Sequence record: LT603033.1 | DNA length: 64,000 bases | Strand: one strand, 5' to 3' | In this document: in pieces, positions 23,634 through 64,000 of the stretch | How the letters are laid out: the number at the start of each line of letters is the position of its first letter | Numbering within the stretch: position 1 is the first letter of the stretch | Position numbers and translations under genes: made by a program | Notes under the pieces: model-generated | Databases searched by the model: none | What the model was told of the DNA's origin: nothing | What the model saw: the letters and a program-made list of their open reading frames with translations, nothing else

Positions 23634-23693
23634 TTATCCCTCCATTGGTATAATTATTATAACGTATTTATTATGCATATCCAAAAAATGAGC

Positions 23694-40713: not shown

Positions 40714-41097
40714 ATGGTTGATAAATGGAATAAGAAAGATCCATCACATGATGTTGATATTTCTGGTCTAGACAATGCACATAAGCACAAGTATCTAGAT
40801 TCACTAGGTCTTCTAAAACCAGACCAAAGTCTTGCACATGATCGTCCATCCCGTGAAAAAGCATTTAGCCTAGAATCACTAGGTCATGAGCTTAATCGTG
40901 TGTTTGAGGATCACCCAATCTATGTACGTGATATTATCGAGAAACTTAAAGTAACTCCTAAAGAGCACTTTAAAGCAACAGTACACTCTGCATTCCGTGC
41001 ATTGCATGATTCTCTCAAGAAAACTCACAATCTTCGTAAAATTCATGATGAAATCGTGAATGCAATCGAAAGTGAAAAACATAAGTTCAAGAAGTAA
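40714..41097 (+). CDS. putative internal virion protein, paralog of N-terminus of 41343 protein
   Basis: DKW ... YLDSLGLL ... VF..HP..V..I...L...PKE..K shared with 41343; late-type promoter. Confidence 0.6.
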   Translation: MVDKWNKKDPSHDVDISGLDNAHKHKYLDSLGLLKPDQSLAHDRPSREKAFSLESLGHELNRVFEDHPIYVRDIIEKLKVTPKEHFKATVHSAFRALHDSLKKTHNLRKIHDEIVNAIESEKHKFKK

Positions 41098-49547: not shown

Positions 49548-49787
49548 ATGAAACTATCTTTTATACGTTTAGCAGAATTCTTCGGTACTGATATAATTAC
49601 ATTACAACAAATTGCAGACAATACTTCATTAAGTACACAAGAAGTACTTGACTTGGATGTAATTAAGTGTGATAATACTTCCATCGATTACAAAGAAGGT
49701 CTTGTCGAAAAAGATAAGATTCAGGCTAAGATTAATGGTGCTGGACGGGTTCAGTACTGGAAAGGAGTTTTAAGTAATGCCAGCTAA
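49548..49787 (+). CDS. hypothetical protein
   Basis: GAGG RBS. Confidence 0.7.
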   Translation: MKLSFIRLAEFFGTDIITLQQIADNTSLSTQEVLDLDVIKCDNTSIDYKEGLVEKDKIQAKINGAGRVQYWKGVLSNAS

Positions 49788-51663
49788 ATTAACCCCTAAA
49801 CAAGCAAAAGAAAAATTCAACAATAAAGTATTAGAACATAACGTTCCAATTGAAGCTGATTATAGTAAGTATGAAAATGCCAAATTAAAAAACATCCAAG
49901 TAGTTTGCAATGATGTATTAAAACACAAATCAGGCATATCACAAGTATATCTTATGGATCACGCAAACCTCACACACCCATCTAAAAAATTTGGTTGTCC
50001 TGAATGTGAAGACTGGTATAATGGTCATGCTAAAAGTTTAGATATTTTAATTGTTAGGGAAAGAATTAATTCTTGGATTAGTACTTATGGTGGCATAATT
50101 GATACAGTTAGTGGTGAAGTTGAAGTTTATAAAAATAATTCAACAAAAATACCATATATTTGTAAAAATGGAACTAAAAAAACGCTTACTATTTCTACAC
50201 TGGGTGATGAAATCGGTTGTAATTGTTCTAAATGTAAATCTGAATTAATATCAGAAATCGAAGATAACAATGAATATACATCCATGACTACTGATGATGA
50301 TTGTGTTACAATTTCCCATTTTATATTTGGGGATGATGTTGCATTCTCGTGGATTTCACCATTGGAAATGAAAAAACATGGTTACGGTCTTGCCGAAAAA
50401 ATGAAAGAAAAAGCATTGTCGGTTGGTAAAAATATTATTGGATATGCAATATCATCTCTTAGTGAATGGAAAAATGAAAAAACTCCTGTAATAACGGAAC
50501 ACGAAGGAGTATTATATCGTATTTCCAGAGCATCATATTTGATCAATAATAATATAGTACATAGACCACATTATACAAAAAATAATTTTTTATATTATTT
50601 TTACAAATGTTCACCTAACAATCAACTTATTACACCAATCCTAATACCTGATGATGTTGGTACAAAAAAGAAAATTAAAGTATGTTATAAATCATGTGGG
50701 TGTGAATACGATATATCTGTGGACGTTATAATGAACAGAAATTTAAAAACTTGTGGAAACTGTAAAAATATAGATACTAAAACATTTATAGAAAAGTGCT
50801 TGGAGTTCAAATCAAGTGGAGAATATATCTATGATAGAGTAAACTATATAAATCAAAGTACACCTGTAACTATAGTTCATAAAATTTACGGAGAATTCAA
50901 AAGTACACCACAAAATCACTTAACACATTTAAAAAACAGTTTGAAATATGATACAGCTAACTTTAAAATAAAAAATCTAACTCAATTTAAAATTAAAGCA
51001 AATGAAGTTCATAATAACTTATATAATTATGATAAAGTTGATTATGTAAATTCTTCAACGAAAGTATTAATAACTCATCCAGTGTATGGAGACTTTTGGC
51101 AAACTCCAAATGGGCATTTGGCAGGTAAAGGACACCCGAAAGTCAAAGGTGGTGTTCCTTATACATGTGATGAATTTAAAATTAAAGCAAATGAAGTTCA
51201 TAATAACTTATATAATTATGATAAAGTTGATTATGTAAATTCTTCAACGAAAGTATTAATAACTCATCCAGTGTATGGAGACTTTTGGCAAACTCCAGCA
51301 AGTCACCTTTGTGGGTCTGGTCATCCACTTGCGGCTGGTCATTCTCAGCAATATGCATATATTCATAATATTTTGGATGGTGATTTATCTGTAGCATTGA
51401 AATATGGTATTGAAAAGCAGAAAGGTAAGAGGGTTATGCAGCAAAATAAAAAATCATTATTTAAAATTGAATCGTTACATACGTATTTTTTCACATCTGT
51501 GTTTGAGTGTAAGGAAGCTGAAAAAGAATGTAAAAAACTATTTGGTAAAGGCGTTTTAACTAAACAAGAAATGCCAGATGGTTATACTGAAACTACTACA
51601 CCAAACAACATAGATAAAATTATTGCAATCTATGAAAAATGGGGTGGGGTGAAAAAAAACTAA
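49777..51663 (+). CDS. homing-endonuclease-like protein with DUF723-type repeats and C-terminal GIY-YIG/T5orf172-like domain
   Basis: Repeats F..KA.EVH...Y.YDKVDY.NS.TKV.I.HP..G.F.QTP..HL; Cys pairs; C-terminal YAY..KYGI..R...DGYTE. Confidence 0.62.
   Translation: MPAKLTPKQAKEKFNNKVLEHNVPIEADYSKYENAKLKNIQVVCNDVLKHKSGISQVYLMDHANLTHPSKKFGCPECEDWYNGHAKSLDILIVRERINSWISTYGGIIDTVSGEVEVYKNNSTKIPYICKNGTKKTLTISTLGDEIGCNCSKCKSELISEIEDNNEYTSMTTDDDCVTISHFIFGDDVAFSWISPLEMKKHGYGLAEKMKEKALSVGKNIIGYAISSLSEWKNEKTPVITEHEGVLYRISRASYLINNNIVHRPHYTKNNFLYYFYKCSPNNQLITPILIPDDVGTKKKIKVCYKSCGCEYDISVDVIMNRNLKTCGNCKNIDTKTFIEKCLEFKSSGEYIYDRVNYINQSTPVTIVHKIYGEFKSTPQNHLTHLKNSLKYDTANFKIKNLTQFKIKANEVHNNLYNYDKVDYVNSSTKVLITHPVYGDFWQTPNGHLAGKGHPKVKGGVPYTCDEFKIKANEVHNNLYNYDKVDYVNSSTKVLITHPVYGDFWQTPASHLCGSGHPLAAGHSQQYAYIHNILDGDLSVALKYGIEKQKGKRVMQQNKKSLFKIESLHTYFFTSVFECKEAEKECKKLFGKGVLTKQEMPDGYTETTTPNNIDKIIAIYEKWGGVKKN
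50984..51297 (+). repeat. 125-bp perfect direct repeat, period 189 bp
   Basis: 50984-51108 identical to 51173-51297, in frame. Confidence 0.92.
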
Positions 51664-51730: not shown

Positions 51731-52501
51731 ATGACCAGAGAAGCACGTAGCATTCAAATCCAGAAAAACTTCAACTCCATGATGGTTGCTCTTGAGTGTT
51801 TGCTCGATGATAGCAGTACTGTAAAAAGTATGGTTGTCAGTGGTGCTCCTGGTGTTGGTAAGACTTACACCCTGTCTAAACGCCTCCAGAAAGCTCATGA
51901 CGCAGCAGAATGGAACGTAGCTACCATCAGTGGTAAAATGACTACTCTGGCTCTGTACGAAGTTCTGTACAAGAATCGTCATAGCACCAACGTATTAGTA
52001 CTGGATGATATGGACAGCATCTTTGATTCAGAAGACGGTATGAACCTGCTCAAAGCAGTACTGGACAGCGGTAAACGTACTGTGTCTTACATGACTAGCT
52101 CTAAGTACTTAACCACTAACGGTATCCCTAACAGCTTTGATTTTAACGGTCGTATCGTATTCATCACTAACAAAGATTTAGCATTAGATGCTAAAGCTAA
52201 AACGAAAATGTCTGCTCACTATGCTGCTCTTATGTCTCGTTCTGTATACGTTGACTTACAGATTCAGACCAAAAGCGATATCATGATTCACATTGAGAAC
52301 GTGATGAATCAGACTAACATTTTAGAATCTAAGGGTATTAACCGTAATGGTAGTAAAGCAATTCTGAACTGGATGTTGAAGCACGAAGATTCTCTTCGTT
52401 CACCTTCACTGCGTATGCCACTGTTGATTTCGGCAGTATATAACAACAACCCATACGATTGGGAAGAGCAGTGCGAAAACTTGTTCCTTGAGAAAATTTA
52501 A
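51731..52501 (+). CDS. AAA-family P-loop ATPase
   Basis: Walker A GAPGVGKT, Walker B VLVLDDMD, IVFITN. Confidence 0.88.
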   Translation: MTREARSIQIQKNFNSMMVALECLLDDSSTVKSMVVSGAPGVGKTYTLSKRLQKAHDAAEWNVATISGKMTTLALYEVLYKNRHSTNVLVLDDMDSIFDSEDGMNLLKAVLDSGKRTVSYMTSSKYLTTNGIPNSFDFNGRIVFITNKDLALDAKAKTKMSAHYAALMSRSVYVDLQIQTKSDIMIHIENVMNQTNILESKGINRNGSKAILNWMLKHEDSLRSPSLRMPLLISAVYNNNPYDWEEQCENLFLEKI

Positions 52502-52508
52502 TTCCATA

Positions 52509-52540
52509 TTGACAGTACTACCATAGTGTAGTACTATAAC
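52509..52540 (+). promoter_or_regulatory. promoter flanked by two AGTACT sites
   Basis: TTGACA at 52509, AGTACT at 52514 and 52530, -10-like TACTAT/TATAAC. Confidence 0.6.
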
Positions 52541-52566
52541 TTAATATTCACCACCGGAGATACGAT

Positions 52567-52905
52567 ATGCTTGAGTTTTTTAATTCAGATACAATGATTA
52601 GTATTACTTTGATTTATCTGTTTGGTTTTTTCTTTTATCATGCACTGGTTGTAGTACTGTGGTATTTTAAAAAGAAAATTGTTTTTAAACTGTATCCAGT
52701 AAGGAATTCATCACTAGTTCTTTACACACTAGTTCAAGGTTTGTTTGCAATTGTTGGTCTTATGGCACACTTAATTTATTGTGCCAATCCTCACTTGAAC
52801 TCAATCTCACAATATATTGTATTCTTTGGGTTGTTCATTTGGTTAGTTGTATACTTAATCCATCTCATTATTCATGGTAGAGATAAAATTCGCGGAGACT
52901 TCTAA
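52567..52905 (+). CDS. small membrane protein family member
   Basis: About 3 TM; WYFKK..F..YP; basic C-terminus. Confidence 0.72.
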   Translation: MLEFFNSDTMISITLIYLFGFFFYHALVVVLWYFKKKIVFKLYPVRNSSLVLYTLVQGLFAIVGLMAHLIYCANPHLNSISQYIVFFGLFIWLVVYLIHLIIHGRDKIRGDF

Positions 52906-53252
52906 TGTTTGAAGCTTATCTTGAGTTTTTAAAGAGTAGTTCTGTTGCACATTCAATTGCAGGGATTATTCTAACAGGTTATGTAACATTTTGGGTAGTT
53001 ATGTTTCTAGGATGGTATTTTAAACGACAATTCTATAAGCGTAATGGTGAAGATTTTATGAATTCTTTCATTAATCAATCGTTGTTTGCATCAACATTGA
53101 TAGCATGTATTGTAGCAACACTCACAGGAAAGGTACTGCCAGCATTCTCCGCAGTTTACGGTACATTGGGTATGATATGTGTAGTTTTTTACTTGACCAT
53201 TAAAATTTGTTGTGTTATGATTGAACTTCGAAATAAGATACCGGAGGAATGA
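52905..53252 (+). CDS. small membrane protein family member
   Basis: GWYFKR.FY; ends LRNKIPEE. Confidence 0.72.
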   Translation: MFEAYLEFLKSSSVAHSIAGIILTGYVTFWVVMFLGWYFKRQFYKRNGEDFMNSFINQSLFASTLIACIVATLTGKVLPAFSAVYGTLGMICVVFYLTIKICCVMIELRNKIPEE

Positions 53253-53587
53253 TGGAGTACTTTATTGATTTACTGCCGTGGTATATGAAAGTTAGTACTT
53301 TGTACTATATTATTAGTGCTGGATTCTACTTTCTGATGTGGTTCTTTAAACGACCAATTTCAGTATTCATCGCTGATAACATGCTGCAATTAAAATTACA
53401 CGCATGGTTTGGTATGGCGATGATTATGCCTATTATTCACTACTCAATGATTAGTAGAGGTTTCCGTTCTAATGGTGAACCAATTGTATTAGTATTCTAT
53501 TGGGGTTCAACTATTGCATATGTAAGTTTGTTGTTGTTCCCAGTCGTTCATAAATTACGTGCTAAAGTCCCTGATGCGAGGTACTAA
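53249..53587 (+). CDS. small membrane protein family member
   Basis: WFFKRP; ends LRAKVPDARY. Confidence 0.72.
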   Translation: MMEYFIDLLPWYMKVSTLYYIISAGFYFLMWFFKRPISVFIADNMLQLKLHAWFGMAMIMPIIHYSMISRGFRSNGEPIVLVFYWGSTIAYVSLLLFPVVHKLRAKVPDARY

Positions 53588-53901
53588 TGGATATCGTAAC
53601 ATTGATTTACACGTTGTATTCATTCTATTTCATTATGTGTTGGGTTGGATTTTTATTTGTACTCAAGATGTTTGATTATGTTGAAAAACAGATAAAAGAA
53701 TTTTGTATTCCTTTTATCGGATCAACCATTATTAGTGTTTCTTGTGTGTATTTTTTGGTTTTTGAACCACCAGATAACACTGCAATGATTGACTTGATGT
53801 TACTACCAACAACTGTTACTTTTTTATGTAGTCTGATGCCGCCGATTAGCCGTGGACTAACAGAATTTAGACGCAACCAAAAGCGTAAACGAGGGATGTA
53901 A
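53587..53901 (+). CDS. small membrane protein family member
   Basis: About 3 TM; basic tail. Confidence 0.7.
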   Translation: MDIVTLIYTLYSFYFIMCWVGFLFVLKMFDYVEKQIKEFCIPFIGSTIISVSCVYFLVFEPPDNTAMIDLMLLPTTVTFLCSLMPPISRGLTEFRRNQKRKRGM

Positions 53902-54269
53902 TGGAAATTGCTCTTATTATCTTAACTGCTATGCTGTTTATTAGTACTGTGGTTATAATTGGTAAATTCTTTTGTGTATCATTTTTAGAAACGGTATACG
54001 ATGAAATTGCTGATGATTATGAATTACAAGCCGGATTTTTCATTACGTATTGGCTTAGTTTATTTTGTCTAGTCATTGCTTGGATTTTACATATCTTTAA
54101 ATGGGGTATGGTAGACGGTGATCCTATTATGGCAATTATTGTTCTAGTGTTTGGTATCCTTGGTGGTGCAGTGCATAATCTAATGGTTATCTGGCAAACT
54201 GTTCAATATGTTTTGGTTCCCTATTTCGAAAAGATGCACAGTACAATTAAAAAACGTAAACGAGGTTAG
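53901..54269 (+). CDS. small membrane protein family member
   Basis: IGKFF...VYD; basic tail. Confidence 0.72.
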   Translation: MEIALIILTAMLFISTVVIIGKFFCVSFLETVYDEIADDYELQAGFFITYWLSLFCLVIAWILHIFKWGMVDGDPIMAIIVLVFGILGGAVHNLMVIWQTVQYVLVPYFEKMHSTIKKRKRG

Positions 54270-54270
54270 T

Positions 54271-54633
54271 ATGAACGGGATAGAATTATCTTTCGTTGGT
54301 CAATTACTAGTAATGGCGTATACATTTATCTTCTCACTGAATGCATTCGTGTGCATTGGGAAGTACTTCCATAAGCGACCATTATCAAATATATATGATG
54401 TAATCCAAAAGAGATATAGTCCAGCATATACTGTGTTGGGTACAGTATTCAATTTTGGTTTTATTGTATTAATAATTGGACTGTTCACATCCTCTTTGAA
54501 TACAATAACCTTCGGTCTTATGATATGTTCATTGGTATTAGCCGTAATTATATGTTGTTTAGTACTGCACCTTGTGGTACTATTGTATATAAAGATCTCT
54601 GAAATCCACCAACGTTTGGGTATGAGGAAATAA
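54271..54633 (+). CDS. small membrane protein family member
   Basis: IGKYFHKRP...IYD; start corrected to ATG after GAGG. Confidence 0.72.
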   Translation: MNGIELSFVGQLLVMAYTFIFSLNAFVCIGKYFHKRPLSNIYDVIQKRYSPAYTVLGTVFNFGFIVLIIGLFTSSLNTITFGLMICSLVLAVIICCLVLHLVVLLYIKISEIHQRLGMRK

Positions 54634-54634
54634 T

Positions 54635-55006
54635 ATGAGTTACCGTGAGATATTTTCCATTATTTCAATTATTATGTTCAGTACTGGAACACTGGTATGG
54701 TTATTATACTTCTTCTGTATTAATCCAGTGTATAATATGTTATGTAATATTAAATCAAGTGCCGGATATATCACTTTTATGGTCTTTATGGGATATTATT
54801 GTCTAAGCATTTTAGGTGTTGTTTTGGTTGTTATATTTGATGTGGGACCAAATAGTGATGGTATGGAAATACATGAATTAATAACCATGTTTGGATGTAT
54901 GATACCAACAGCACTACTGTTTGTAGCTACTGGTAGTGGATTGATAAAATTATATAATTATTTAAAATCCATTCATAATTCCATTCATAATAAGCGTATG
55001 TCATAA
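54635..55006 (+). CDS. small membrane protein family member
   Basis: YFFCINPVYN; basic tail. Confidence 0.72.
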   Translation: MSYREIFSIISIIMFSTGTLVWLLYFFCINPVYNMLCNIKSSAGYITFMVFMGYYCLSILGVVLVVIFDVGPNSDGMEIHELITMFGCMIPTALLFVATGSGLIKLYNYLKSIHNSIHNKRMS

Positions 55007-55008
55007 TA

Positions 55009-55038
55009 AAAATCCAGTACTATCAAGTACTGGATTAA
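55009..55038. terminator. probable terminator hairpin
   Basis: AATCCAGTAC-TATCAA-GTACTGGATT. Confidence 0.6.
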
Positions 55039-55047
55039 TAAGGAGTT

Positions 55048-55710
55048 ATGATGAAAACAAAATTAGGTTTGTTTTATAAAAATTATTTCGTTAAACAGCG
55101 TAAATTTATAAAAAAATATTTCTCTGGTGAGAAGTCTAGTCCTATAATTTTTAAAAGACCAAGTTATAATACTTACTTAGCTGATGCTAAACAGTCTAAG
55201 AAATTTATTACTCTTTTAAATAAAAACAAAATTAAAGCTTCTTATGTTGAAACGAGAAGAAACTCATCAATAACTCCTGGTGATTTTATTGAGTACGGAT
55301 GTTTCAATATTAAGTATAATGATAATACATACTTTATGGATATTGATTGTAATACATCCAATCTTTTTAACATTGTAGTAAATCCATTAAAACAATATAA
55401 TGTTTATGGTGATTCTATTATCAAATTAATCAAAAACAAAGATGGCTTTGATTTTGAAATAAATGTTTTAGATGATAATTTTGACGAAGTACCCGTAAAC
55501 CCTGAAATCTGTGATATTTTAAACAGTTTAAAAGGTAGTACCTACAATATATCATCTGATTTAATGTTTCAGTACTCATTAATCCATAAAGATATTGAAA
55601 AGTATATTGAATGTTCCAAAATTTTGAATTATCTTTACGATGAATTTAAAAAGAGTTCTAAAATAACCGCATACACTTTGTACAATATTCCTAAAATGGT
55701 GAATCTTTGA
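55048..55710 (+). CDS. FQ-motif family protein (long, divergent)
   Basis: SSDLMFQYSLIHKD; AAGGAG RBS. Confidence 0.68.
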   Translation: MMKTKLGLFYKNYFVKQRKFIKKYFSGEKSSPIIFKRPSYNTYLADAKQSKKFITLLNKNKIKASYVETRRNSSITPGDFIEYGCFNIKYNDNTYFMDIDCNTSNLFNIVVNPLKQYNVYGDSIIKLIKNKDGFDFEINVLDDNFDEVPVNPEICDILNSLKGSTYNISSDLMFQYSLIHKDIEKYIECSKILNYLYDEFKKSSKITAYTLYNIPKMVNL

Positions 55711-56843
55711 CAAATACAGTACTGGCAACTCCACCGTCTGTAATATATTGTCCAGTACTGTAAATTTGTATACCATCGGTTAAGTAAGTTCTGTATAAAG
55801 TTGCTGTAACATATACGTTATTCATATTCATCTCTATTGGTAGTACACATTTGGTATAGGCCGACACATCTGTTTGTGTACCTATACCCAATTGACCTGC
55901 GTTATCGCCTGTGTTATAACCAGTTGCGTAAACACCTAATGAAGTTATAATATGATTAGAAAAATATGAATAACCCACACTGCTTCTTATTATATCACCT
56001 GGTGCTTGTGTTGTTTGTCTTAACGAAATATATGTTTGTGATGTAGAACCATTTGCTAACTGACCAAAGTATTGTCCACCACCATGATATGCAAATAATT
56101 TATTAGTACTATTATTACTTGCTATAGCAAAAGCGAAGTAACTTGAGTTTGTTGTATAATCTTTCACCGTATAGGTATTAGTTATTTGAGAACATAACGT
56201 GTACTTTGAATATAACGTCATGTCGGTTGTACCTACGCCTGATATTGCACCAGTATAATACAATCTCCCATCGGTTCCAATAAATCCTTGCATAAGAAAA
56301 TTTGCCAGTATTTTGGATGGTGTTACTCCAGTAGGTACTGTTCCTTGTACAAATGATGAAAGTGAATCGGTACTTCTACCATTTCCCAGTTGTCCATAAC
56401 TACCATAACCCGTATTCCATATCGTGTTGTCTGTACATAATACGCTTAATGCACCTGCACTAACTGCAATTTGTTTTATTGTTTTTCCAAGTGCTGTTAT
56501 TCTATCAAACACTATCTTTGCAGAAGCCCACGTTGTTGACTTATCAGTTGATAAACCGAATGATGCACCATTTCCAGCATACCACATCGTATTATCTTTC
56601 TTTTTAATTAATGTTGACTCATACCCGAACCCATAGATCTTCTACGTTTGTATTGCACAAAACCCATTTGGTTTGTGTTATAATATTACCTATACCCATT
56701 TGCCCAAACTCTTGAGAGCCTCTACTGTACAACGTACCATCTGACATAAGGGCAAAAACTGTTGTATCAGATGAAGCTATTTTTGTTACAGAAGGTTGTA
56801 TGTTCTTTTTTGATGATGTGATAATTCTTCCAAAGGGTAGCAT
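55691..56843 (-). CDS. RCC1-like beta-propeller protein, frameshifted near 56624-56632
   Basis: MLPFGR start at 56843; RCC1 repeats GYGSYGQLGNG, GQLGIG in second frame; one extra base splits the gene. Confidence 0.7.
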
Positions 56844-56915
56844 TGTATCCTCCAAATGTAAATCGTTATTATATTTAGGACAAAAAAATGCCAGTACAAG
56901 GCACTGGCATAAAAT

Positions 56916-58085
56916 CTAAGCAGAAGGCATATCCTTCATTTTAATAAATGAAAATTGTGTACCAGTATTTGTGGTTTGATCAGTAAAATATGAATTACTA
57001 CCAGCCCAGTACAATTCATTATTAACTATACAATATATAACAGAACTCGAACTCTGTGAATACACACGACTTATATTTGATGGTTCCACTCCAGTACTGA
57101 ACTGAACCGAACCCAACTGTGAACTTGGTATCACATCAGTTGGTCTACCTAAACCATTAACACCAGCCCCACCACCACATGTATATACCCCAGTACTATC
57201 AGTTGATATATTAACATAACCATTCCCGGCATTTTCAAATAGTATTTCACTGGGAACAACACCAAATCCTGTAAGATCTATTTTCCTGAATGTAGTGTAA
57301 ACAGTAGAACCACCAACACCTCTTCCACCATAATCATTAGAACCAGCCATATAGATACTATATCCAGAACTTCCTAAACATAATAACTGTACGTTGTCAT
57401 ATAATATTTGCATAGATATAACGTTATCAGGAATACTCAATACCGTAAAAGTAGTTAAAGAAGAACTTCCAATATTACTACCAACCGATGTTCCACATCT
57501 GTAGTACTTACCGCCTTTTATATAATGGAACGATGAACCGCCTAACTTATGTGCTCCTATTGCACTTACCCCAGTATCTATAAGAATGGGAGATACAACT
57601 TTGTTATTAACACCTAACTCAGATCTACTGTTCATACCGAACCCATATAAACGACCATCTAACATCAATATTAGTGTACTACCGGAAGTACCCGCTGACG
57701 TAAATTCTATATTCTTTATTTGCGACACGTCAATACCTACAAATAATGAAGTTACTTCAGTCCAGTTAACATATGAACCACTAGCCCCAAAATATCCACC
57801 CATGTATAGACCTGCACAATATAACTTATTATCAACAGTCTTTATTAATGTACCGGATACACACGCCCAAAAATCATCAACTTCATAGGGTACATGTACC
57901 CAACCACCTAATACATCACTAGCATCCCCTGTACCTAATTTATAGTTCGAACCAGAACCACGCATGTACATATTCCCTGTACTATAAAGTAATCCGACAT
58001 GTAATTGACTACCATCCAATTTCTTTATTTCAGGAAGAGTTGGTTTAATATTTCCGTACTTTAACATTCTTCCAAAAGGTAACAT
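56916..58085 (-). CDS. RCC1-like beta-propeller protein
   Basis: MLPFGRMLKYGNI; YGFGMNSRSELG, GSNDYGGRG repeats. Confidence 0.8.
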   Translation of the reverse strand: MLPFGRMLKYGNIKPTLPEIKKLDGSQLHVGLLYSTGNMYMRGSGSNYKLGTGDASDVLGGWVHVPYEVDDFWACVSGTLIKTVDNKLYCAGLYMGGYFGASGSYVNWTEVTSLFVGIDVSQIKNIEFTSAGTSGSTLILMLDGRLYGFGMNSRSELGVNNKVVSPILIDTGVSAIGAHKLGGSSFHYIKGGKYYRCGTSVGSNIGSSSLTTFTVLSIPDNVISMQILYDNVQLLCLGSSGYSIYMAGSNDYGGRGVGGSTVYTTFRKIDLTGFGVVPSEILFENAGNGYVNISTDSTGVYTCGGGAGVNGLGRPTDVIPSSQLGSVQFSTGVEPSNISRVYSQSSSSVIYCIVNNELYWAGSNSYFTDQTTNTGTQFSFIKMKDMPSA

Positions 58086-58095
58086 ATTCCCTCCT

Positions 58096-59238
58096 TTATA
58101 TTATATTTAATTTTTGATATGTGGGATATATTTCTTGACTTGGTTTATCTAAAATATATTGTACGTTACCTGCACCATATAAACTACCATCAATAGTAGC
58201 TAATTTAACATTAGTATCACCAGCCACCCACGATGTCATTTTTGATGCACCTGGAACTAAAGTTGTATTTTTTACGCTGGTGGAAACGGAATTTACCCCC
58301 AAACTACTACTTAAGTTATATCCACTACTATAAACTTCACCATTAATTCTAAATTTAACGTATACTGGTAAGTTAACAGCATTACCATAGTTGTAGTTTG
58401 TATGCTTTATAAAACGAAACTCTGAACTTACATATGTTTCCGGTTGAGCTACACTGTATATATTGTATGACTGAAAGGTACTACCAGCCGCAGAATTTAA
58501 TAATCCAGTGTCCCCAGTATAGCCACTAAAATAAACTGAAGTAGCATCACTCCACATAAAACAAGATGTTGCAGTTAAATAAAAATCAATCACATTTGAC
58601 TTAACTACTCTTGGTGTCAGGTAACCAGTACCGCCCACAGTTGTGAAGCAGTTGAATCTGTTCTCACCCCACGCAACAACGTCGCCATTCGATCTTATTC
58701 CACATGCGTTCAGATGACCAAATTGCATTTTAGAAACACCAGTAAGGTTTGTATTTTGTGTCCATGTAGGGGCGTATGTTGTAGTACTTGCTAACCCAAT
58801 CATACCATATAAATTAGAACCTAAAACCCAAACTGAACCATCGGCGTTTACAATAACAGTTGCATGATCACGTGCAACATATATTTCGCTCGCATTGTCA
58901 AATTTGTCTTTGATTAAACTATCAATGTTAATAAAAACATTACCACTATCTCCATATGCATATGCTGCTCCACTAAACCAATATGAACTATCATTTTTTA
59001 AAATAGTTAATCCAGACTGACTAAACCAAAAATTAACCACATTTTCGGCTATTAATGTACGTACTGTAAGTGTTGTTCTATTTCCTAATCCAAATTGACC
59101 TGCTGATTGAGTCCCACTTGCATATAATTTACCATCACTTGTAAGTATTATACAACCATTTATTGTTAAATCTACTTTTTTTATATCAAGTGGGATTATC
59201 ATATTCCCGTACTGAATCATTCTTGCAAAAGGTAACAT
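58096..59238 (-). CDS. RCC1-like beta-propeller protein
   Basis: MLPFARMIQYGNM; GSNLYGMIG, WGENRFN repeats. Confidence 0.82.
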   Translation of the reverse strand: MLPFARMIQYGNMIIPLDIKKVDLTINGCIILTSDGKLYASGTQSAGQFGLGNRTTLTVRTLIAENVVNFWFSQSGLTILKNDSSYWFSGAAYAYGDSGNVFINIDSLIKDKFDNASEIYVARDHATVIVNADGSVWVLGSNLYGMIGLASTTTYAPTWTQNTNLTGVSKMQFGHLNACGIRSNGDVVAWGENRFNCFTTVGGTGYLTPRVVKSNVIDFYLTATSCFMWSDATSVYFSGYTGDTGLLNSAAGSTFQSYNIYSVAQPETYVSSEFRFIKHTNYNYGNAVNLPVYVKFRINGEVYSSGYNLSSSLGVNSVSTSVKNTTLVPGASKMTSWVAGDTNVKLATIDGSLYGAGNVQYILDKPSQEIYPTYQKLNII

Positions 59239-59240
59239 AA

Positions 59241-59306
59241 TTCCCTCCTTTATTCATTATACTATATTTAATACAAATAAGAAAGCCAGTACTCTGTACT
59301 GGCATA
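59241..59306 (-). repeat. intergenic terminator / late-promoter / RBS cassette
   Basis: GCCAGTAC..GTACTGGC-TTTC, TATTAAATA, AAGGAGGGAATT before ATG. Confidence 0.85.
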
Positions 59307-59309
59307 ATG

Positions 59310-60452
59310 TCAATAAGCATCCCAAGGTAATGGTGTCTTTCTAAACCCATACCTAGTTGCGTTCTGCCCATCTCCGGCAATGTATCTACCGGTCCCACAC
59401 TGATATAATTCAGTACTGCTACATATCGCACCACCAATAGTCCCACTACACCACTGTGTTATATTAGAATATAATATTGGTAAATCACTACATTTGGTAT
59501 ATACTGCAACCGTGGCAGTCCCGCTCGGACCACCAAACACACTTCGGTTCGAACCCGTGTAATATATGCCATCTGGACTCATAAATGCAGATGTATAAGT
59601 TGTACTGCAATCCACTGGACTTCTTATATTATTAAGATCGCTTGGGTATGCTCTAGCACCATATGTGTATACATTACCAGCAGTAGTAATACCATTACCT
59701 AACTGACCATCATTTTGTCCACCACATGTAACCAACGATGCAGAACCAGAAACAATTGCAGTAGCATTATACGAAGTACCCATTGCAATAGAAGCACCAG
59801 ACAATAGTTTTGGTGTAACGATAGCTGTTGTATTACCCTGGCCTAATTCACCATTTGTGTTTCGTCCCCATGCGTATATAGAAGTCGTATCCAATCGACA
59901 TAGTACTGAACCATAACTAAACGTATATCGCATGTCATTTACAGCAGAAGGCAAATTAACCTTAGTTGCAACACTAATAACACCACCAGTAACACCACTG
60001 TTTGCGTTCATATTACGTCCATATGCGTATAAAGAACCATCAGCAGTTTTAATATGCATCATGCCATCTGTGCAATATAATGCATCGATGCTATCCACTG
60101 CAACTGGACCCATACTGGCAGTTATATCGGTCCACCCAAGCGTGGTAGTACTAGAAATTAAGTTATTTCCTGCGTATAGTATTCTATTATTATTAGTAAC
60201 TACAACTGTATATCTGGCAGTAACACCAATTAATCGAACATCAGTATATATCTTCGACCACGCACCTAGTGAATTGGTATTTGCATCCAAAAAGCCTAAC
60301 TGCCCATCTGTATTGTATCCAATACCCCATGCATCACCTGCACTGTCCAATAACACTTCATGTGAAAAGCCAATCTTAAAATCTTTTATTGTAGGAACTA
60401 CCGGAACTGGTGCAATATTCCCGTACTTAACCATTCTTCCAAAAGGTAACAT
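59310..60452 (-). CDS. RCC1-like beta-propeller protein
   Basis: MLPFGRMVKYGNI at 60452; GYNTDGQLG, WGRNTNGELGQG, GGQNDGQLGNG. Confidence 0.85.
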   Translation of the reverse strand: MLPFGRMVKYGNIAPVPVVPTIKDFKIGFSHEVLLDSAGDAWGIGYNTDGQLGFLDANTNSLGAWSKIYTDVRLIGVTARYTVVVTNNNRILYAGNNLISSTTTLGWTDITASMGPVAVDSIDALYCTDGMMHIKTADGSLYAYGRNMNANSGVTGGVISVATKVNLPSAVNDMRYTFSYGSVLCRLDTTSIYAWGRNTNGELGQGNTTAIVTPKLLSGASIAMGTSYNATAIVSGSASLVTCGGQNDGQLGNGITTAGNVYTYGARAYPSDLNNIRSPVDCSTTYTSAFMSPDGIYYTGSNRSVFGGPSGTATVAVYTKCSDLPILYSNITQWCSGTIGGAICSSTELYQCGTGRYIAGDGQNATRYGFRKTPLPWDAY

Positions 60453-60519
60453 AATTCCCTCCTTATTCATTATACTATATTTAATACAAATAAGAAAGCC
60501 AGTATCAAGTACTGGCATT
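60453..60519 (-). repeat. intergenic terminator / late-promoter / RBS cassette
   Basis: Near-identical to 59241-59306. Confidence 0.85.
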
Positions 60520-60523
60520 GTGT

Positions 60524-61703
60524 TTATCTAAAAGGAATGCACTTTTTGAATTTATATATATATCCAGTCTCACCTTGTTCAGTAAAATACCCAGGGTTTC
60601 CAGTCCAGTATAAATCCTCACCTATACTAACTACCGATACTGAACCATTACCAATCGTACCAAACCACTCAACATGTGATAAGTCAACACTATCATCAAA
60701 GAATTCTATTGGTAATATTGAACCATAATTCCCAGAGAATGCGTTGCGGCCTAATCCAGCACCATTAGAATTATATCCCTTACCATTCGTATTAATAATG
60801 TTAGTACTGGATTTTATTGCATTAACATAGGATACTGGTGAAAGTTTATCGAATGAATTTGCTGTTATATCGGTATAGGGATTTGTAGTAAATGATGACC
60901 TTATTATAGCAGTATTTTCAGAACCACCTATAGTCAACTGTGTGTTCCAACCAGCCGCCATTAAAGACAAAGCAGATGTACTACTTTGAACAATCAAACG
61001 TGTTACCCATCGTGTAGCTTGTACTGCAATTACATGAGAACTACCAAGATTCAATGCAGTAAAAGTAGTAATAGGATTATTATCACCGGTTCCTAATTGA
61101 TAAAAAGTATTCTCACCACAACGATAATATATACCATCTTTTATATAGTGAAAGTTTCTGCTCATTTCACTAGATGCAATTGCAGATACACTAGTGTCTA
61201 TTAAGAGTGGAGATGTAATTGGTGTAGTTGCTGTACCCAATTCACTTGCACCATTCATGCCTATACCATATAACTGACCGTCACTTGTTAGTATTAACAT
61301 GGAATTGTTAGTACTGGTTGATGATGTTATTTTTATATCTTTTATTGAACTCGGAGAAATAGATCCAAAATATGATTCACAACGAGTCCATGTTGAAACA
61401 GAAGATGATATACCAAAAACTGAGTTAGTTCCACTATAGTACAATTCCCCTTGTTTTGTTCTAATTATAGTACAATATAAAGAACTCCAGAAATCATCAA
61501 CACTATAAGGACATAAAACCCATCTATCTAAAAAAGATGAACCAGTAACTCCCATTTTTGATAATTGGTTTCCGTCCACGCATATATAATGACCCATCAC
61601 TGTATAATACGCTTATTGAATTTTCATCACTATTAATTTTAACAACAGTATCTTTGCCAGGGGCAATATTCCCATAATTCATCATTCTTCCAAAAGGTAA
61701 CAT
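60524..61703 (-). CDS. RCC1-like beta-propeller protein, frameshifted near 61569-61575
   Basis: MLPFGRMMNYGNI starts at 61703 (read by hand), stops early; body continues in track ORF 60524..61600. Confidence 0.72.
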
Positions 61704-61770
61704 AATTCCCTCCTTTATTTGTTATACTATATTTAATACAAAAAGAAAAGCCAGTACTGAGTACTGGCTA
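61704..61770 (-). repeat. intergenic terminator / late-promoter / RBS cassette
   Basis: GCCAGTACT-C-AGTACTGGC hairpin, TATTAAATA, AAGGAGGG. Confidence 0.85.
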
Positions 61771-61775
61771 TTATA

Positions 61776-62966
61776 TTATAATTGTCGGGGTGTATCTAGT
61801 ACATATCTAGTTGTACTAGGACCACCATCATCATAAGTTCCGGTTGAATATATATTTTTCATATCAGCAGTTAGAAAAGTACGATACGAACCGCGATATA
61901 TTTTTATTTTATCATACATAGAATATGTTATTTGTGTAGGCATTGGACATGCAGTAAACTTACCAACAGTTGCACTAGTACCAATACCCAATGAACCAGC
62001 ATAACTACTGGCATTTAAACCAGTTGCATATACACCAGTACTCGTAACTAGTATACTAGATTGTGTTGGGTATCCTGTATGAATTGAATACAAAGTTCCA
62101 GTTGGTAATGTCGTACTATTGCTCCCTAATACAGCAAGTGCCGAACTGGTTGTGGTATTGTTACCCCATGCACCATTACTCGCTAAACCACCAACTAGAA
62201 ACTGACGTGCACCAGAACTTGGATTCTCAACCAAAGCACTGACTGCACCACTTGAGCATCCAGTGTATTGTAACGTTTTTGTGTATGTTGTACTTGGTTT
62301 ATATAAAGTATATTCATTAAATGGTGTCCATGTGGTACTGGTACTTATACCTGACGTACCACCACCAATATATAAATTATTTTGTGTATCAAAAAACATT
62401 ACACAGTTATTTGTTGACTGTATTTGTGCAATATCAACATTAGGCGTGACAGCTTTTACAAATGATCCATCTGTTATTTGTTGAGTACTACCAGTACCAT
62501 CAGCGAATTGTCTAGCCCCACTCCAACCAGTACTCCATATTGTATTATTATCCATTAATACCGTAAACCACGTAGTACCTCCATACATCTGTTTAATTGA
62601 AGTACTTGAACTTTGCGTGTACAAATTTTCAATATATTGGTTATAACTTAAAAACGTAGTAGTACTAGTTGGTAAACCAACATGATCACCATATCCACAA
62701 TAAAAATAATTTGAGTCATTGTCTTTTACTAATAAAGTTCCTTGTGTAAGCCAGCAATCGTTAACGTTTTCTCTAATTAATGTCCATGATTTTAATGCAG
62801 TGTTGTTTCCTCTACCGAATTTCCCAAAACTATTATTCCCACGTGCATATAGTTGACCATCCGTATACAGAACCACAACATCTAAATCAGTTGGGATTAT
62901 TTTCTTAATTTGAAGTGGTACTGGGGCAATATTCCCATAATTCATCATTCTTGCAAAAGGTAACAT
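61776..62966 (-). CDS. RCC1-like beta-propeller protein
   Basis: MLPFARMMNYGNI; RGNNSFGKFG, GSLGIG repeats. Confidence 0.82.
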   Translation of the reverse strand: MLPFARMMNYGNIAPVPLQIKKIIPTDLDVVVLYTDGQLYARGNNSFGKFGRGNNTALKSWTLIRENVNDCWLTQGTLLVKDNDSNYFYCGYGDHVGLPTSTTTFLSYNQYIENLYTQSSSTSIKQMYGGTTWFTVLMDNNTIWSTGWSGARQFADGTGSTQQITDGSFVKAVTPNVDIAQIQSTNNCVMFFDTQNNLYIGGGTSGISTSTTWTPFNEYTLYKPSTTYTKTLQYTGCSSGAVSALVENPSSGARQFLVGGLASNGAWGNNTTTSSALAVLGSNSTTLPTGTLYSIHTGYPTQSSILVTSTGVYATGLNASSYAGSLGIGTSATVGKFTACPMPTQITYSMYDKIKIYRGSYRTFLTADMKNIYSTGTYDDGGPSTTRYVLDTPRQL

Positions 62967-63033
62967 AAATTCCTCCTTTATTCATTATACTATATTTAAT
63001 ACAAATAAGAAAGCCAGTACAGTGTACTGGCAT
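62967..63033 (-). repeat. intergenic terminator / late-promoter / RBS cassette
   Basis: Near-identical to 59241-59306. Confidence 0.85.
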
Positions 63034-63037
63034 TAAA

Positions 63038-64000
63038 TCATTGTATAAATGACATATCAACTTCTGTATAACTAAGAATGTTTTGTCCAGCAATTCCCCC
63101 CATTACTACCATAGCATACCCACAATAATATAATTGCTCAGTGTCCGTAAGTATAAGTGAACCAGATGGAGTGCGTACCAAATTACACGAACTATTAAAC
63201 GAAGTATACGAAGGAGTATATGAGTACTGATTAATATTATTACCAACACCTAATTGACCAAATCCATTCGACCCAGATGCGTATAGAACTTCATCACCTT
63301 TAGCTATATGTGATGCCATGTTACTAACACACGTATATAGAGTATAAACTCCTGAACTCAATAATGTCGGAGTTTTGTATTGTATATCGGTAGATGAAGA
63401 AGTACCACCTGTGCCAAATTCGTTCCCGTATTGTGCACCGAACTGTTTACCACAAGCGTACAAATTATTATCCGATTTAATAAAAAATGTACTCTGATAA
63501 CTTACATCAAAATCTATAACATCTGAAGCAATCATCGTCACCCCAGTAATAGAAGTTTGATTACCTGTACCTAACTGATAGTAATAGTTAAAACCACAAC
63601 CCCATAAAGTATTATCTTCTTTTAGGTATATGTTACCAACTGCCTTTTTAACCGAAGTTATAGTATCTACCCTTTTGAATGTGTTAAAAGAATTAATGTT
63701 TGTACCATCACCAAATGATGATAGGTTCGAGTTATTGTTAACTCCACAACAATACAACGTACCATCGTTTGTTATCAAATTCACCTTCATATCATTAAAA
63801 CTACTCATGTATTTTATATCAGAAACATTAATACCACCTGATGTTATCCACGTAGTACAGTCCGTCCACAAAGTTTTTGTATCAGTTACACCAGTGAATG
63901 CCTTCGTGTTACCAGTGATAAAAACTTTTCCAGTACCTTTCTCTTCATACAATTGACAACTACTACTGTTATCTTCCAATAGAACTCGTTTAACATTCTC
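63038..64000 (-). CDS. RCC1-like beta-propeller protein (5'-truncated by window edge)
   Basis: GFNYYYQLGTG, GSNGFGQLGVG; frame stays open to position 64000. Confidence 0.82.
   Translation of the reverse strand, partial: ENVKRVLLEDNSSSCQLYEEKGTGKVFITGNTKAFTGVTDTKTLWTDCTTWITSGGINVSDIKYMSSFNDMKVNLITNDGTLYCCGVNNNSNLSSFGDGTNINSFNTFKRVDTITSVKKAVGNIYLKEDNTLWGCGFNYYYQLGTGNQTSITGVTMIASDVIDFDVSYQSTFFIKSDNNLYACGKQFGAQYGNEFGTGGTSSSTDIQYKTPTLLSSGVYTLYTCVSNMASHIAKGDEVLYASGSNGFGQLGVGNNINQYSYTPSYTSFNSSCNLVRTPSGSLILTDTEQLYYCGYAMVVMGGIAGQNILSYTEVDMSFIQ

What the first reader, a model, noticed from the sequence alone, without database searches (positions are those of the whole stretch)
55691..64000. Array of at least 7 RCC1-like propellers with an invariant N-terminal peptide
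All six visible starts read MLPF[G/A]R, five continuing M[L/I/V/M][K/Q/N]YGN[I/M], while the propeller bodies of about 380 aa are highly diverged and Ser/Thr/Gly-rich. A constant leader on variable propellers under late-type promoters suggests a plug-in display system. The leader would dock interchangeable binding domains on the virion (fibres or whiskers), or route them to a shared assembly site. RCC1 repeats in bacteriophages are unusual.
Basis: partly seen in the sequence, partly recalled or inferred. Interest (0 to 1): 0.68.

Follow-up and report, generated by a model that had tools for sequence, protein, structure and literature searches.

The report
Leader-tagged virion propeller array, jumbo phage
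A giant E. coli phage carries a tandem array of very different beta-propeller genes that all start with the same 13-residue peptide, and this peptide marks proteins of several folds that published proteomics finds in the virus particles of related phages, so it most likely acts as a loading or docking tag.

Summary
The window is bases 1-64000 of Escherichia phage vB_Eco_slurp01 (Asteriusvirus). The array holds 13 units (55691-71425, minus strand): 11 intact and 2 frameshifted.

- **Contrast:** paralog bodies are about 20% identical; the first 13 residues are 77% identical.
- **Fold:** AlphaFold gives a 7-bladed RCC1-like propeller. The leader is a free, low-confidence tail.
- **Spread:** a leader profile finds 4-17 genes per genome in Asteriusvirus, Mimasvirus, Eneladusvirus and relatives. 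RaK2, PA5oct and Atu_ph07 have none.
- **Other folds:** in those genomes the leader also heads Kelch propellers, LamG lectin folds and unknown folds.
- **Virion association:** published virion mass spectrometry detects 8/10 (CBB), 8/11 (phAPEC6) and 3/4 (GAP32) leader proteins.
- **Not cleaved:** two CBB peptides start at leader residue 7, so the leader stays on the mature protein, unlike the T4 capsid-targeting sequence.
- **Shuffling:** units are bounded by a terminator, late-type promoter and leader cassette, and are permuted between near-identical phages.
- **Second lineage:** the unrelated phage W70 has three RCC1 virion proteins with a different shared leader on a homologous body.

The leader is best read as a lineage-specific virion-incorporation tag on exchangeable binding modules. 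The docking site, and whether it lies outside or inside the capsid, are not shown.

The parts
55691..56587 (-). Unit 1, body fragment (298 aa) of a frameshifted RCC1-like gene; no leader on this ORF
   Evidence: the same 298-aa ORF is present in 121Q
56619..56843 (-). Unit 1, leader fragment (74 aa). It starts MLPFGR but has lost the YGN part
56888..56910 (-). Terminator-like hairpin (GCCAGT..ACTGGC followed by a T-run) between unit 2 and unit 1
56916..58085 (-). Unit 2, intact leader plus RCC1-like propeller, 389 aa. It follows unit 3 after a 10-nt spacer with no cassette of its own
   Evidence: 99.7% identical to phAPEC6 gp010, which was detected by MS
58096..59238 (-). Unit 3, intact leader plus RCC1-like propeller, 380 aa; no ortholog in phAPEC6 (best hit 36%)
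59239..59309 (-). Intergenic cassette: terminator hairpin 59285-59303, promoter-like TAAATATAGTATAAT 59256-59270, AAGGAGG ribosome site
59310..60452 (-). Unit 4, intact, 380 aa. This is the protein that was modelled: a 7-bladed RCC1-like propeller from residue 22, with residues 1-12 disordered
   Evidence: ortholog of phAPEC6 gp005 (89.6% identical), which was detected by MS
60453..60523 (-). Intergenic cassette (hairpin 60498-60516, promoter-like motif 60469-60483)
60524..61703 (-). Unit 5, frameshifted. The leader ORF is 61524-61703 (59 aa) and the body ORF 60524-61600; a one-base frame change lies after the first blade
   Evidence: contigs of three other runs cover it without gaps
61704..61775 (-). 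Intergenic cassette (hairpin 61749-61769, promoter-like motif 61721-61735 with one mismatch)
61776..62966 (-). Unit 6, intact, 396 aa
   Evidence: 87.6% identical to its best phAPEC6 match, an unannotated ORF
62967..63037 (-). Intergenic cassette (hairpin 63013-63031, promoter-like motif 62984-62998)
63038..64000 (-). Unit 7, RCC1-like. Its 5' end with the leader lies outside the window at 64186; six more units follow up to 71425

Best explanation
The array encodes accessory virion proteins built as [13-residue leader] + [short Pro-rich linker] + [binding module]. In this phage the module is always a 7-bladed RCC1-like propeller.

**Shown**
- The leader is kept at the amino-acid level across at least four phage groups while synonymous sites vary.
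- It heads at least four kinds of body: RCC1 propellers, Kelch propellers, LamG/ConA-like lectin folds and unknown folds.
- It is predicted to be a free tail.
- Proteins that carry it are strongly enriched in published proteomes of purified virions.
- It is still on the mature virion protein.

**Inferred**
- The leader is a short linear docking motif. It becomes ordered on binding one conserved, multi-copy site of the particle, so many different modules compete for the same sites and virions carry a mixed set.
- The modules are lectin-like or protein-binding folds. Their bodies turn over fast and are exchanged between unrelated coliphages, so they most likely sit outside the particle and bind host-surface or environmental ligands.
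- Each unit is flanked by a terminator, late-type promoter, ribosome site and leader cassette. This cassette evolves in concert within a genome and serves as the crossover site that adds, deletes and permutes units.
For: **Leader against body**
- 77% against 20% identity.
- The leader occurs only at the 13 unit starts in the genome.
- Across genera, Pro, Phe, Arg, Tyr, Gly and Asn codons vary while the residues are kept.

**Distribution of the leader profile**
- slurp01 13, phAPEC6 15, Munch 17, fENko-Kae01 13, XbC2 11, CBB 10, Serratia BF 9, Yen9-04 5, GAP32 4.
- RaK2, PA5oct and Atu_ph07 have 0 credible matches; PA5oct's single hit has E = 0.12.
- Non-RCC1 bodies are LamG, Kelch, an RCC1+Kelch fusion and unknown folds.

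**Structure**
- AF2 model has pTM 0.82. Residues 1-12 have pLDDT below 50 and the first strand starts at residue 22.
- Foldseek matches UVR8, RPGR, HERC2 and RCC1 at E about 1e-21.

**Virion mass spectrometry**
- CBB 8/10 (Fisher p = 2e-7), phAPEC6 8/11 (p = 2e-6), GAP32 3/4 (p = 0.003).
- 5 of the 6 virion proteins that CBB has and GAP32 lacks carry the leader.
- Peptides LFEYANVIIPPNYK (CBB_536, residues 7-20) and LLQYGNK (CBB_553, residues 7-13) are in the CBB virion peptide list.

**Lineage-specific leader**
- W70 (Vequintavirinae) has three tandem RCC1 virion proteins that share a different leader, MLEM[LM]NL.
- One W70 body is 37% identical to the slurp01 66586-67788 paralog, and the alignment starts right after the two leaders (residue 23 of W70, 24 of slurp01).

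**Shuffling**
- Homology blocks between slurp01 and phAPEC6 begin 10-75 nt upstream of one ATG and end 34-50 nt past the next. They are permuted.
- 3 of 11 paralogs have no ortholog in phAPEC6.

**Outside-facing use of such folds**
- The RCC1 protein of phiCD211 lies in its tail-fibre module.
- LamG bodies match domains of baseplate and large virion proteins.
Against: - No structure or imaging places any leader protein on the particle.
- The docking partner is unknown, and the one complex prediction I tried could not be run.
- Virion MS preparations also contain replication enzymes in phAPEC6, and the fENko-Kae01 proteome is not from purified particles.
- Peptide counts for the RCC1 proteins are low: 1-5 in phAPEC6.
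- The phAPEC6 authors suggest an inner-body role.
- Within slurp01, leader codons 2-7 are invariant at the DNA level. Part of the within-genome identity is therefore concerted evolution rather than selection on the peptide.
- The phyletic link with hairs or whiskers rests on four phages.
Confidence: 0.6

Rival explanations
1. The leader is a capsid-targeting signal like the T4 CTS. On this reading the propellers, Kelch and LamG modules are packed inside the head (inner body) and ejected with the DNA. They could be a varied set of protein-binding inhibitors of host defences, as T4 IPI* is.
For: - T-even internal proteins are a highly diverse set that shares only a conserved N-terminal CTS (PMC3012670).
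- phAPEC6 has an inner-body rod, and its authors propose the RCC1 proteins for it.
- The array lies outside the structural gene module and turns over fast.
- From my own knowledge, not tested here: RCC1-like propellers can be tight protein inhibitors (BLIP-II).
Against: - The leader is retained in virion proteins, whereas the T4 CTS is cut off by the prohead protease.
- No conserved L/I-x-E cleavage motif follows the leader.
- The proteins have near-neutral pI (5.0-8.2), not the charge pattern of DNA-embedded proteins.
- LamG and Kelch lectin-type folds, and homologous domains in tail-fibre or baseplate proteins, point outward.
- Rough spectral counts in W70 are on the order of portal and baseplate proteins, not of hundreds of copies.
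Confidence: 0.22
2. The conserved start is a nucleic-acid feature, not a peptide with a function. It would be part of a promoter, 5'UTR and translation-start cassette that gene conversion keeps identical.
For: - Within slurp01 codons 2-7 are identical at synonymous sites, and they use CCT and GGG/GGA, which the bodies rarely use.
- The about 70-nt upstream cassette is nearly identical between units.
- Leader haplotypes are shared by neighbouring units.
Against: - Across genera the DNA differs at synonymous sites and the upstream cassettes differ or are absent (operon-like packing in Munch, Yen9-04 and XbC2), yet the residues M-[LI]-P-F..[ILM]..Y-[GA]-N persist.
- Orthologs that share only 40% body identity keep the leader.
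Confidence: 0.06
3. The N-terminal peptide is simply a structural part of the propeller (the closing 'velcro' strand), and it is conserved for folding.
For: From my own knowledge: many propellers close the ring with an N-terminal strand.
Against: - The model leaves residues 1-21 without secondary structure, and residues 1-12 have pLDDT below 50.
- The same peptide heads LamG and Kelch proteins and proteins of unknown fold.
- The homologous W70 propeller has a different leader.
Confidence: 0.03
4. The proteins are DNA or chromosome condensation factors, as many records annotate them.
For: Only the family name (RCC1) and the speculation.
Against: - The pI is neutral, with K+R about equal to D+E.
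- The name comes from eukaryotic RCC1, whose chromatin role is specific to it. The closest folds include UVR8, RPGR and HERC2, which are protein-binding propellers.
- Sister genomes use lectin folds in the same slot.
Confidence: 0.03

Closest known systems
T4 capsid-targeting sequence (CTS) on polymorphic internal proteins (IPI-III, Alt)
   Same: - A short conserved N-terminal peptide is the only feature shared by a diverse, fast-changing set of proteins that end up in the virion.
- From my own knowledge (Repoila et al. 1994): the shared sequence also serves as a recombination point.
- The CTS itself is described in PMC3012670.
   Different: - The sequences are unrelated.
- The CTS is cleaved by the prohead protease and its cargo is small and internal. 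Here the leader is retained and no cleavage motif follows it.
- Here the cargo is a 25-45 kDa lectin or propeller fold.
Conserved N-terminal anchor modules of interchangeable tailspikes or tail fibres (for example CBA120 TSP1-4, G7C gp63.1/gp66, K1-5/SP6 adaptor system); my own knowledge
   Same: - The N-terminus is specific to the phage lineage and the distal binding part is exchanged horizontally between lineages on the same host. The W70-slurp01 pair shows this.
- Several alternative binders occur per virion.
   Different: - Those anchors are folded domains of tens to hundreds of residues on trimeric fibres or spikes.
- Here the tag is about 13 residues and predicted disordered, on modules modelled as single chains.
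- The attachment site is not known.
Hoc-type Ig-like capsid decoration and other surface adhesion modules
   Same: These are accessory, non-essential-looking virion proteins with binding folds. The phage also has a virion protein with three tandem Ig-like domains (window 22479-23633).
   Different: - Hoc is one protein per phage with a folded capsid-binding domain.
- Here 4-17 paralogs share a peptide tag.
Promoter-stem-loop cassettes (PeSL) that shuffle genes in T4-type genomes (Arbiol et al. 2010); my own knowledge
   Same: A stem-loop terminator plus promoter repeats flank single genes in a hyperplastic region and mark block boundaries.
   Different: - PeSLs carry early promoters and flank unrelated small ORFs.
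- Here the promoter is late-type and the repeat extends into the coding leader of one protein superfamily.
RCC1-like virion proteins of Vequintavirinae phage W70 (W70_237-239)
   Same: - A tandem set of about 40-kDa RCC1-like proteins, all detected in purified virions and encoded away from the structural module.
- They share an N-terminal peptide, and one body is homologous at 37% identity.
   Different: - The leader differs (MLEM[LM]NL...).
- There are only three copies.
- The phage lineage is different, with a 137-kb genome.

Membership tests
RCC1-like beta-propeller (Pfam RCC1 / RCC1_2 / WD40_RLD; PHROG 4219) | Sequence match to the RCC1 repeat models | tested here: met
   - All 7 window units hit PF25390 at E 1e-9 to 1e-31, below its 150-bit curated cutoff.
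- PF00415 or PF13540 pass their cutoffs in units 3, 4, 5 and 7.
- phrog_4219 matches at E 2e-99.
RCC1-like beta-propeller (Pfam RCC1 / RCC1_2 / WD40_RLD; PHROG 4219) | Seven-bladed propeller fold | tested here: met
   The AF2 model has pTM 0.82. Foldseek matches UVR8, RPGR, HERC2 RLDs and RCC1 at TM 0.65-0.77 and E down to 3e-21.
RCC1-like beta-propeller (Pfam RCC1 / RCC1_2 / WD40_RLD; PHROG 4219) | Ran-GEF or chromatin-binding activity of RCC1 proper | not testable with these tools
   No assay was possible. Neutral pI and the phage virion context argue against it.
T4-type capsid-targeting sequence system | A short conserved N-terminal peptide shared by otherwise unrelated virion proteins | tested here: met
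T4-type capsid-targeting sequence system | The peptide is removed by the prohead protease at an L/I-x-E site | tested here: not met
   Leader residues 7-20 and 7-13 were recovered from CBB virions. No conserved Glu-containing motif follows the leader.
T4-type capsid-targeting sequence system | The cargo lies inside the capsid | not testable with these tools
   There are only whole-virion proteomes.
Modular receptor-binding proteins with a lineage-specific N-terminal anchor | The N-terminus is conserved within a lineage and the distal part is variable and exchanged between lineages | tested here: met
Modular receptor-binding proteins with a lineage-specific N-terminal anchor | Attachment to the baseplate or a fibre, and a role in adsorption | not testable with these tools
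No imaging or genetics is available.
PeSL-like mobile regulatory cassettes | Stem-loop plus promoter repeats flank the genes and coincide with recombination block boundaries | tested here: met
   Hairpins are at 56910, 59303, 60516, 61769 and 63031. Block ends fall at the cassette and leader.
PeSL-like mobile regulatory cassettes | Early (sigma-70) promoter | tested here: not met
   - There is no -35 element, and sigma-70-like sites are not enriched.
- The motif occurs only before virion-protein genes and resembles the T4 late box.

The most novel reading that the evidence does not exclude
The 13-residue leader is a self-sufficient, portable 'virion address' of a whole clade of jumbo phages, and other lineages have tags of their own, such as MLEM[LM]NL in W70. 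Any protein that carries the tag is plugged into a common multi-copy socket on the outside of the particle. Each virion would then display a mixed, combinatorial set of lectins and propellers, and the set is re-dealt by recombination at the tag. This would be a natural peptide-tag display system unlike known fibre-anchor domains.
Probability: 0.3. Interest if true: 0.78.

Novelty: new variant of a known kind. Interest (0 to 1): 0.62.

Why it matters
- It gives a testable function to about a dozen 'DNA condensation protein' or hypothetical genes per genome in a widespread group of jumbo phages, and shows that the usual annotation is probably wrong.
- It explains why a scattered cluster of lectin-like proteins turns up in virion proteomes.
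- It offers candidates for the unexplained hairs and whisker decorations, or for what is attached to them.
- If the tag is sufficient, it is a ready handle for loading foreign proteins onto large phage particles and for studying how accessory adhesins shape adsorption.
- The W70 case suggests that peptide-tagged accessory modules may be a general, overlooked design in large myoviruses.

Tried and rejected
- **Whole genome file:** none is held for this window. I worked through the GenBank record and handles instead.
- **First fold attempt:** I repeated it with window and 121Q loci.
- **IMG/VR scans:** the leader DNA scan and the related-loci scan found only 121Q plus one chance match inside an unrelated gene, L015. 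They gave no wider sampling.
- **Complex prediction:** No partner was tested, and I claim no binding.
- **That Ig-like protein as partner:** it shares the promoter motif and the clade distribution, but the whole genomes are syntenic, so co-occurrence proves nothing.
- **Literature:** searches for the leader strings found no paper. The jumbo-phage comparative papers and reviews I read do not mention the leader.
- **Reads and contigs:** contigs break or join at the cassettes. Such joints can be assembly artefacts at repeats, so I do not count them as independent evidence. RNA-library contigs do not prove transcription.
- **Link between hairs and RCC1:** rejected, because CBB is hairy without any RCC1 gene.
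- **Hairs as polymers of these modules:** rejected as unlikely, because the bodies have unrelated, complete folds.


Full report
**What the window is.** Megablast places the window at bases 1-64000 of Escherichia phage vB_Eco_slurp01 (LT603033.1, 348 kb, Asteriusvirus PBECO4), at 100% identity and with the same coordinates.

**The observation.**
- The minus strand from 55691 to 71425 holds 13 units of one gene family. Eleven are intact (369-400 aa) and two are frameshifted (55691-56843 and 60524-61703). Seven units lie in the window, the last one cut at 64000.
- Among the 11 intact paralogs the bodies are 14-27% identical (mean 20%), and residues 1-13 are 77% identical.
- The degenerate DNA pattern for M-L-P-F-x-R occurs 13 times in the genome, only at these starts, with no hit for the reversed control.
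- All window units match RCC1-like Pfam models.
- An AlphaFold2 model of the 59310-60452 protein (pLDDT 77, pTM 0.82) is a seven-bladed propeller. Its closest solved folds are UVR8, RPGR, HERC2 RLDs and RCC1.
- Both frameshifts are real. Unit 1 is split the same way in 121Q, and phAPEC6 keeps only a matching leader fragment. Contigs of three other runs cover the unit 5 region without gaps.

**The flanks.**
- Most units are preceded by an intergenic cassette of about 72 nt. It holds a GC-rich hairpin with a T-run (terminator-like: 12 sites found against 3.6 expected), the motif TAAATATAGTATAAT, a strong ribosome site, and then the leader.
- Two junctions lack the cassette (58085/58096 and 66577/66586).
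- TAAATAnnnTATAAT occurs 10 times in the whole genome. Eight are in the array. One precedes the virion structural protein at 22479-23633. One precedes a tail-tube paralog.
- In phage CBB, bona fide structural genes carry TATAAATA-type boxes and the leader genes carry [G/T]TAAATAC.
- Sigma-70-type sites are not enriched.

**Is the leader a peptide or a DNA feature?**
- Inside slurp01, codons 2-7 are invariant even at synonymous sites. They use codons that are rare in the bodies, and neighbouring units share leader haplotypes. The cassette and leader therefore evolve in concert within a genome.
- Across genera the picture reverses. In GAP32, CBB, XbC2, Yersinia fHe-Yen9-04 and Salmonella Munch the synonymous sites vary, and the upstream DNA differs or is missing because the genes are packed as operons. 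The residues M-[LI]-P-F-x-x-[ILM]-x-x-Y-[GA]-N are still kept.
- Orthologs of one paralog that are down to 40% identical in the body still carry the leader.
- The peptide itself is therefore under selection.

**The leader is not part of the propeller.**
- The model leaves residues 1-21 without secondary structure, with pLDDT below 50 for residues 1-12.
- More tellingly, the same leader heads proteins of other folds in sister genomes:
  - LamG/ConA-like (XbC2_582, XbC2_584; GAP32_002 and GAP32_530 match weakly; CBB_548 and CBB_551 by their record annotation);
  - Kelch propellers (XbC2_585 and XbC2_590; CBB_550, 552 and 554 by their record annotation);
  - an RCC1+Kelch fusion (XbC2_591);
  - several bodies with no family match.
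- A 15-column profile of the leader gives these counts:

| Genome | Leader genes |
|---|---|
| Munch | 17 |
| phAPEC6 | 15 |
| slurp01 | 13 |
| fENko-Kae01 | 13 |
| XbC2 | 11 |
| CBB | 10 |
| Serratia BF | 9 |
| Yen9-04 | 5 |
| GAP32 | 4 |
| RaK2, PA5oct, Atu_ph07 | 0 credible |

- Almost all sit in one syntenic cluster. The exception is CBB_247, next to structural genes.

**Virion association comes from published proteomes, not from my own data.**
- phAPEC6 belongs to the same species as slurp01. ESI-MS/MS of its virions lists gp003, 005, 006, 007, 009, 010, 549 and 551. I mapped all eight to leader-bearing array genes.
- In CBB, Table 4 lists CBB_247, 536, 537, 548, 549, 551, 552 and 553. 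That is eight of the ten leader genes.
- In GAP32, three of four were detected: 001, 530 and 531.
- Fisher tests against the papers' totals give p = 2e-7, 2e-6 and 0.003. The GAP32 gene total of 545 is my assumption.
- Five of the six virion proteins that CBB has and GAP32 lacks are leader proteins.
- Caveats: the phAPEC6 list also holds some replication enzymes, the RCC1 peptide counts are low, and the fENko-Kae01 proteome was not from gradient-purified particles.

**The leader stays on.** The CBB peptide table holds LFEYANVIIPPNYK and LLQYGNK, each preceded by Arg. These are residues 7-20 of CBB_536 and 7-13 of CBB_553. The mature virion proteins therefore keep the leader. No conserved L/I-x-E motif follows it. 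This separates the system from the T4 capsid-targeting sequence, which is otherwise its nearest analogue: diverse proteins that share only an N-terminal address.

**Turnover.**
- slurp01 and phAPEC6 are near-identical genomes. Even so, the best phAPEC6 matches of the 11 intact slurp01 paralogs are 99.7, 98.6, 92, 90, 88, 75, 64, 62, 36, 33 and 27% identical.
- By contrast, the Ig-like virion protein at 22479-23633 is 100% identical across many of these phages.
- DNA homology blocks start 10-75 nt upstream of one start codon and end 34-50 nt past the next. They run from cassette to the end of the next leader, and their order is permuted.
- The cassette plus leader is thus the crossover site, much like promoter-stem-loop cassettes and the CTS in T-even phages (my own knowledge).

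**A second lineage with its own tag.**
- Phage W70 (Vequintavirinae, 137 kb) has three tandem RCC1 proteins of about 40 kDa. All were found in purified virions, with spectral counts on the order of portal and baseplate proteins.
- They share a different leader, MLEM[LM]NL, which is found only on these three genes.
- One W70 body is 37% identical (E 1e-73) to the slurp01 paralog 66586-67788. That is closer than any two slurp01 paralogs are to each other. The alignment starts exactly after the two leaders.
- So bodies move between unrelated coliphages while the leader is lineage-specific. This is the logic of modular receptor-binding proteins.

**Where do they sit?** This is not shown.
- Evidence for the outside:
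  - the folds are lectin and propeller types;
  - the LamG bodies are related to domains of baseplate and giant virion proteins;
  - the phiCD211 RCC1 protein lies in the tail-fibre module;
  - the pI is neutral;
  - the leader is uncleaved;
  - apparent copy numbers are low to moderate;
  - leader-gene number loosely tracks hairiness: phAPEC6 and 121Q are hairy on head and tail, CBB has whiskers, and RaK2 has no leader genes.
- Evidence for the inside: the inner body of phAPEC6 and the T4 precedent.
- CBB has whiskers but no RCC1 gene, so the propellers are not the whisker shafts.

I could not run the complex prediction against a candidate partner.

**Verdict.** The array and its virion association were already in the literature under the name 'DNA condensation proteins'. 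I found four points in no paper:
- the shared leader;
- its spread over several folds and genera;
- its retention in virions;
- cassette-bounded shuffling, together with the parallel tag in W70.

I rate this a new variant of a known kind (address peptides and modular binders), of moderate to high interest.

Noticed in passing
window 51731-55710 (+ strand): A P-loop/AAA-like NTPase (51731-52501) is followed by seven tandem paralogs of small multi-pass membrane-like proteins of 104-123 aa (52567-55006) and a 220-aa protein. They converge on the leader array, with a 20-nt 3' overlap at 55691-55710. The same arrangement occurs in GAP32 (524-529), CBB (542-547) and Munch (528-533). The function is unknown.
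   Followed up: partly
window 22479-23633 (-), promoter motif 23656-23670: This is a virion structural protein, the homolog of phAPEC6 gp077 (10 MS peptides). It has a small N-terminal domain, a disordered linker and three tandem Ig-like domains that resemble bacterial adhesin stalks. It has the same promoter motif as the array and the same clade distribution, and RaK2 holds only a weak N-terminal match. It is a Hoc-like candidate for a surface decoration or a docking platform.
   Followed up: partly
window 40714-41097 and 41343-42896 (+): Two highly charged proteins, helical-looking by sequence, share an SLGLL..Q motif. They are homologs of the MS-detected phAPEC6 gp037c and gp035c (annotated 'chromosome segregation protein') and may be internal head proteins.
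   Followed up: no
window 49777-51663 (+): A 628-aa endonuclease-like protein (PHROG 681/559) has an exact internal duplication of a block of about 50 residues.
   Followed up: no
L021 (Yersinia fHe-Yen9-04), L024 (Xanthomonas XbC2), Serratia BF record: A second leader class, MLPFPIISNT.., coexists with the YGN class in the same arrays. This may mean two docking sites or partners.
   Followed up: no
L018/L019 (phAPEC6 MK817115) and L020/L025 (GAP32 JN882285): There are annotation gaps. phAPEC6 has leader ORFs with no annotated CDS at their leader start, at 3-47, 2434 and 6063 (gp002 is annotated from an upstream start). GAP32_531 is annotated from a GTG without a leader because the gene is split by the ends of the linear record; its leader piece lies at bases 82-126.
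   Followed up: partly
L001 23529-42001 (record 71528-90000, outside the window): Directly upstream of the array begins a long run of tandem small genes of 45-120 aa on the + strand. This is probably the array of more than 30 genes that Hua et al. noted for 121Q.
   Followed up: no
window 59100-59299 and 60300-60499: In metagenome and isolate contigs the depth at the cassette and leader is 5-10 times that of the bodies, contigs break there, and different bodies follow the same leader. The same loose end at 60403 appears in three runs. This is expected for a repeat that joins alternative units, but it is also what assembly artefacts produce.
   Followed up: partly
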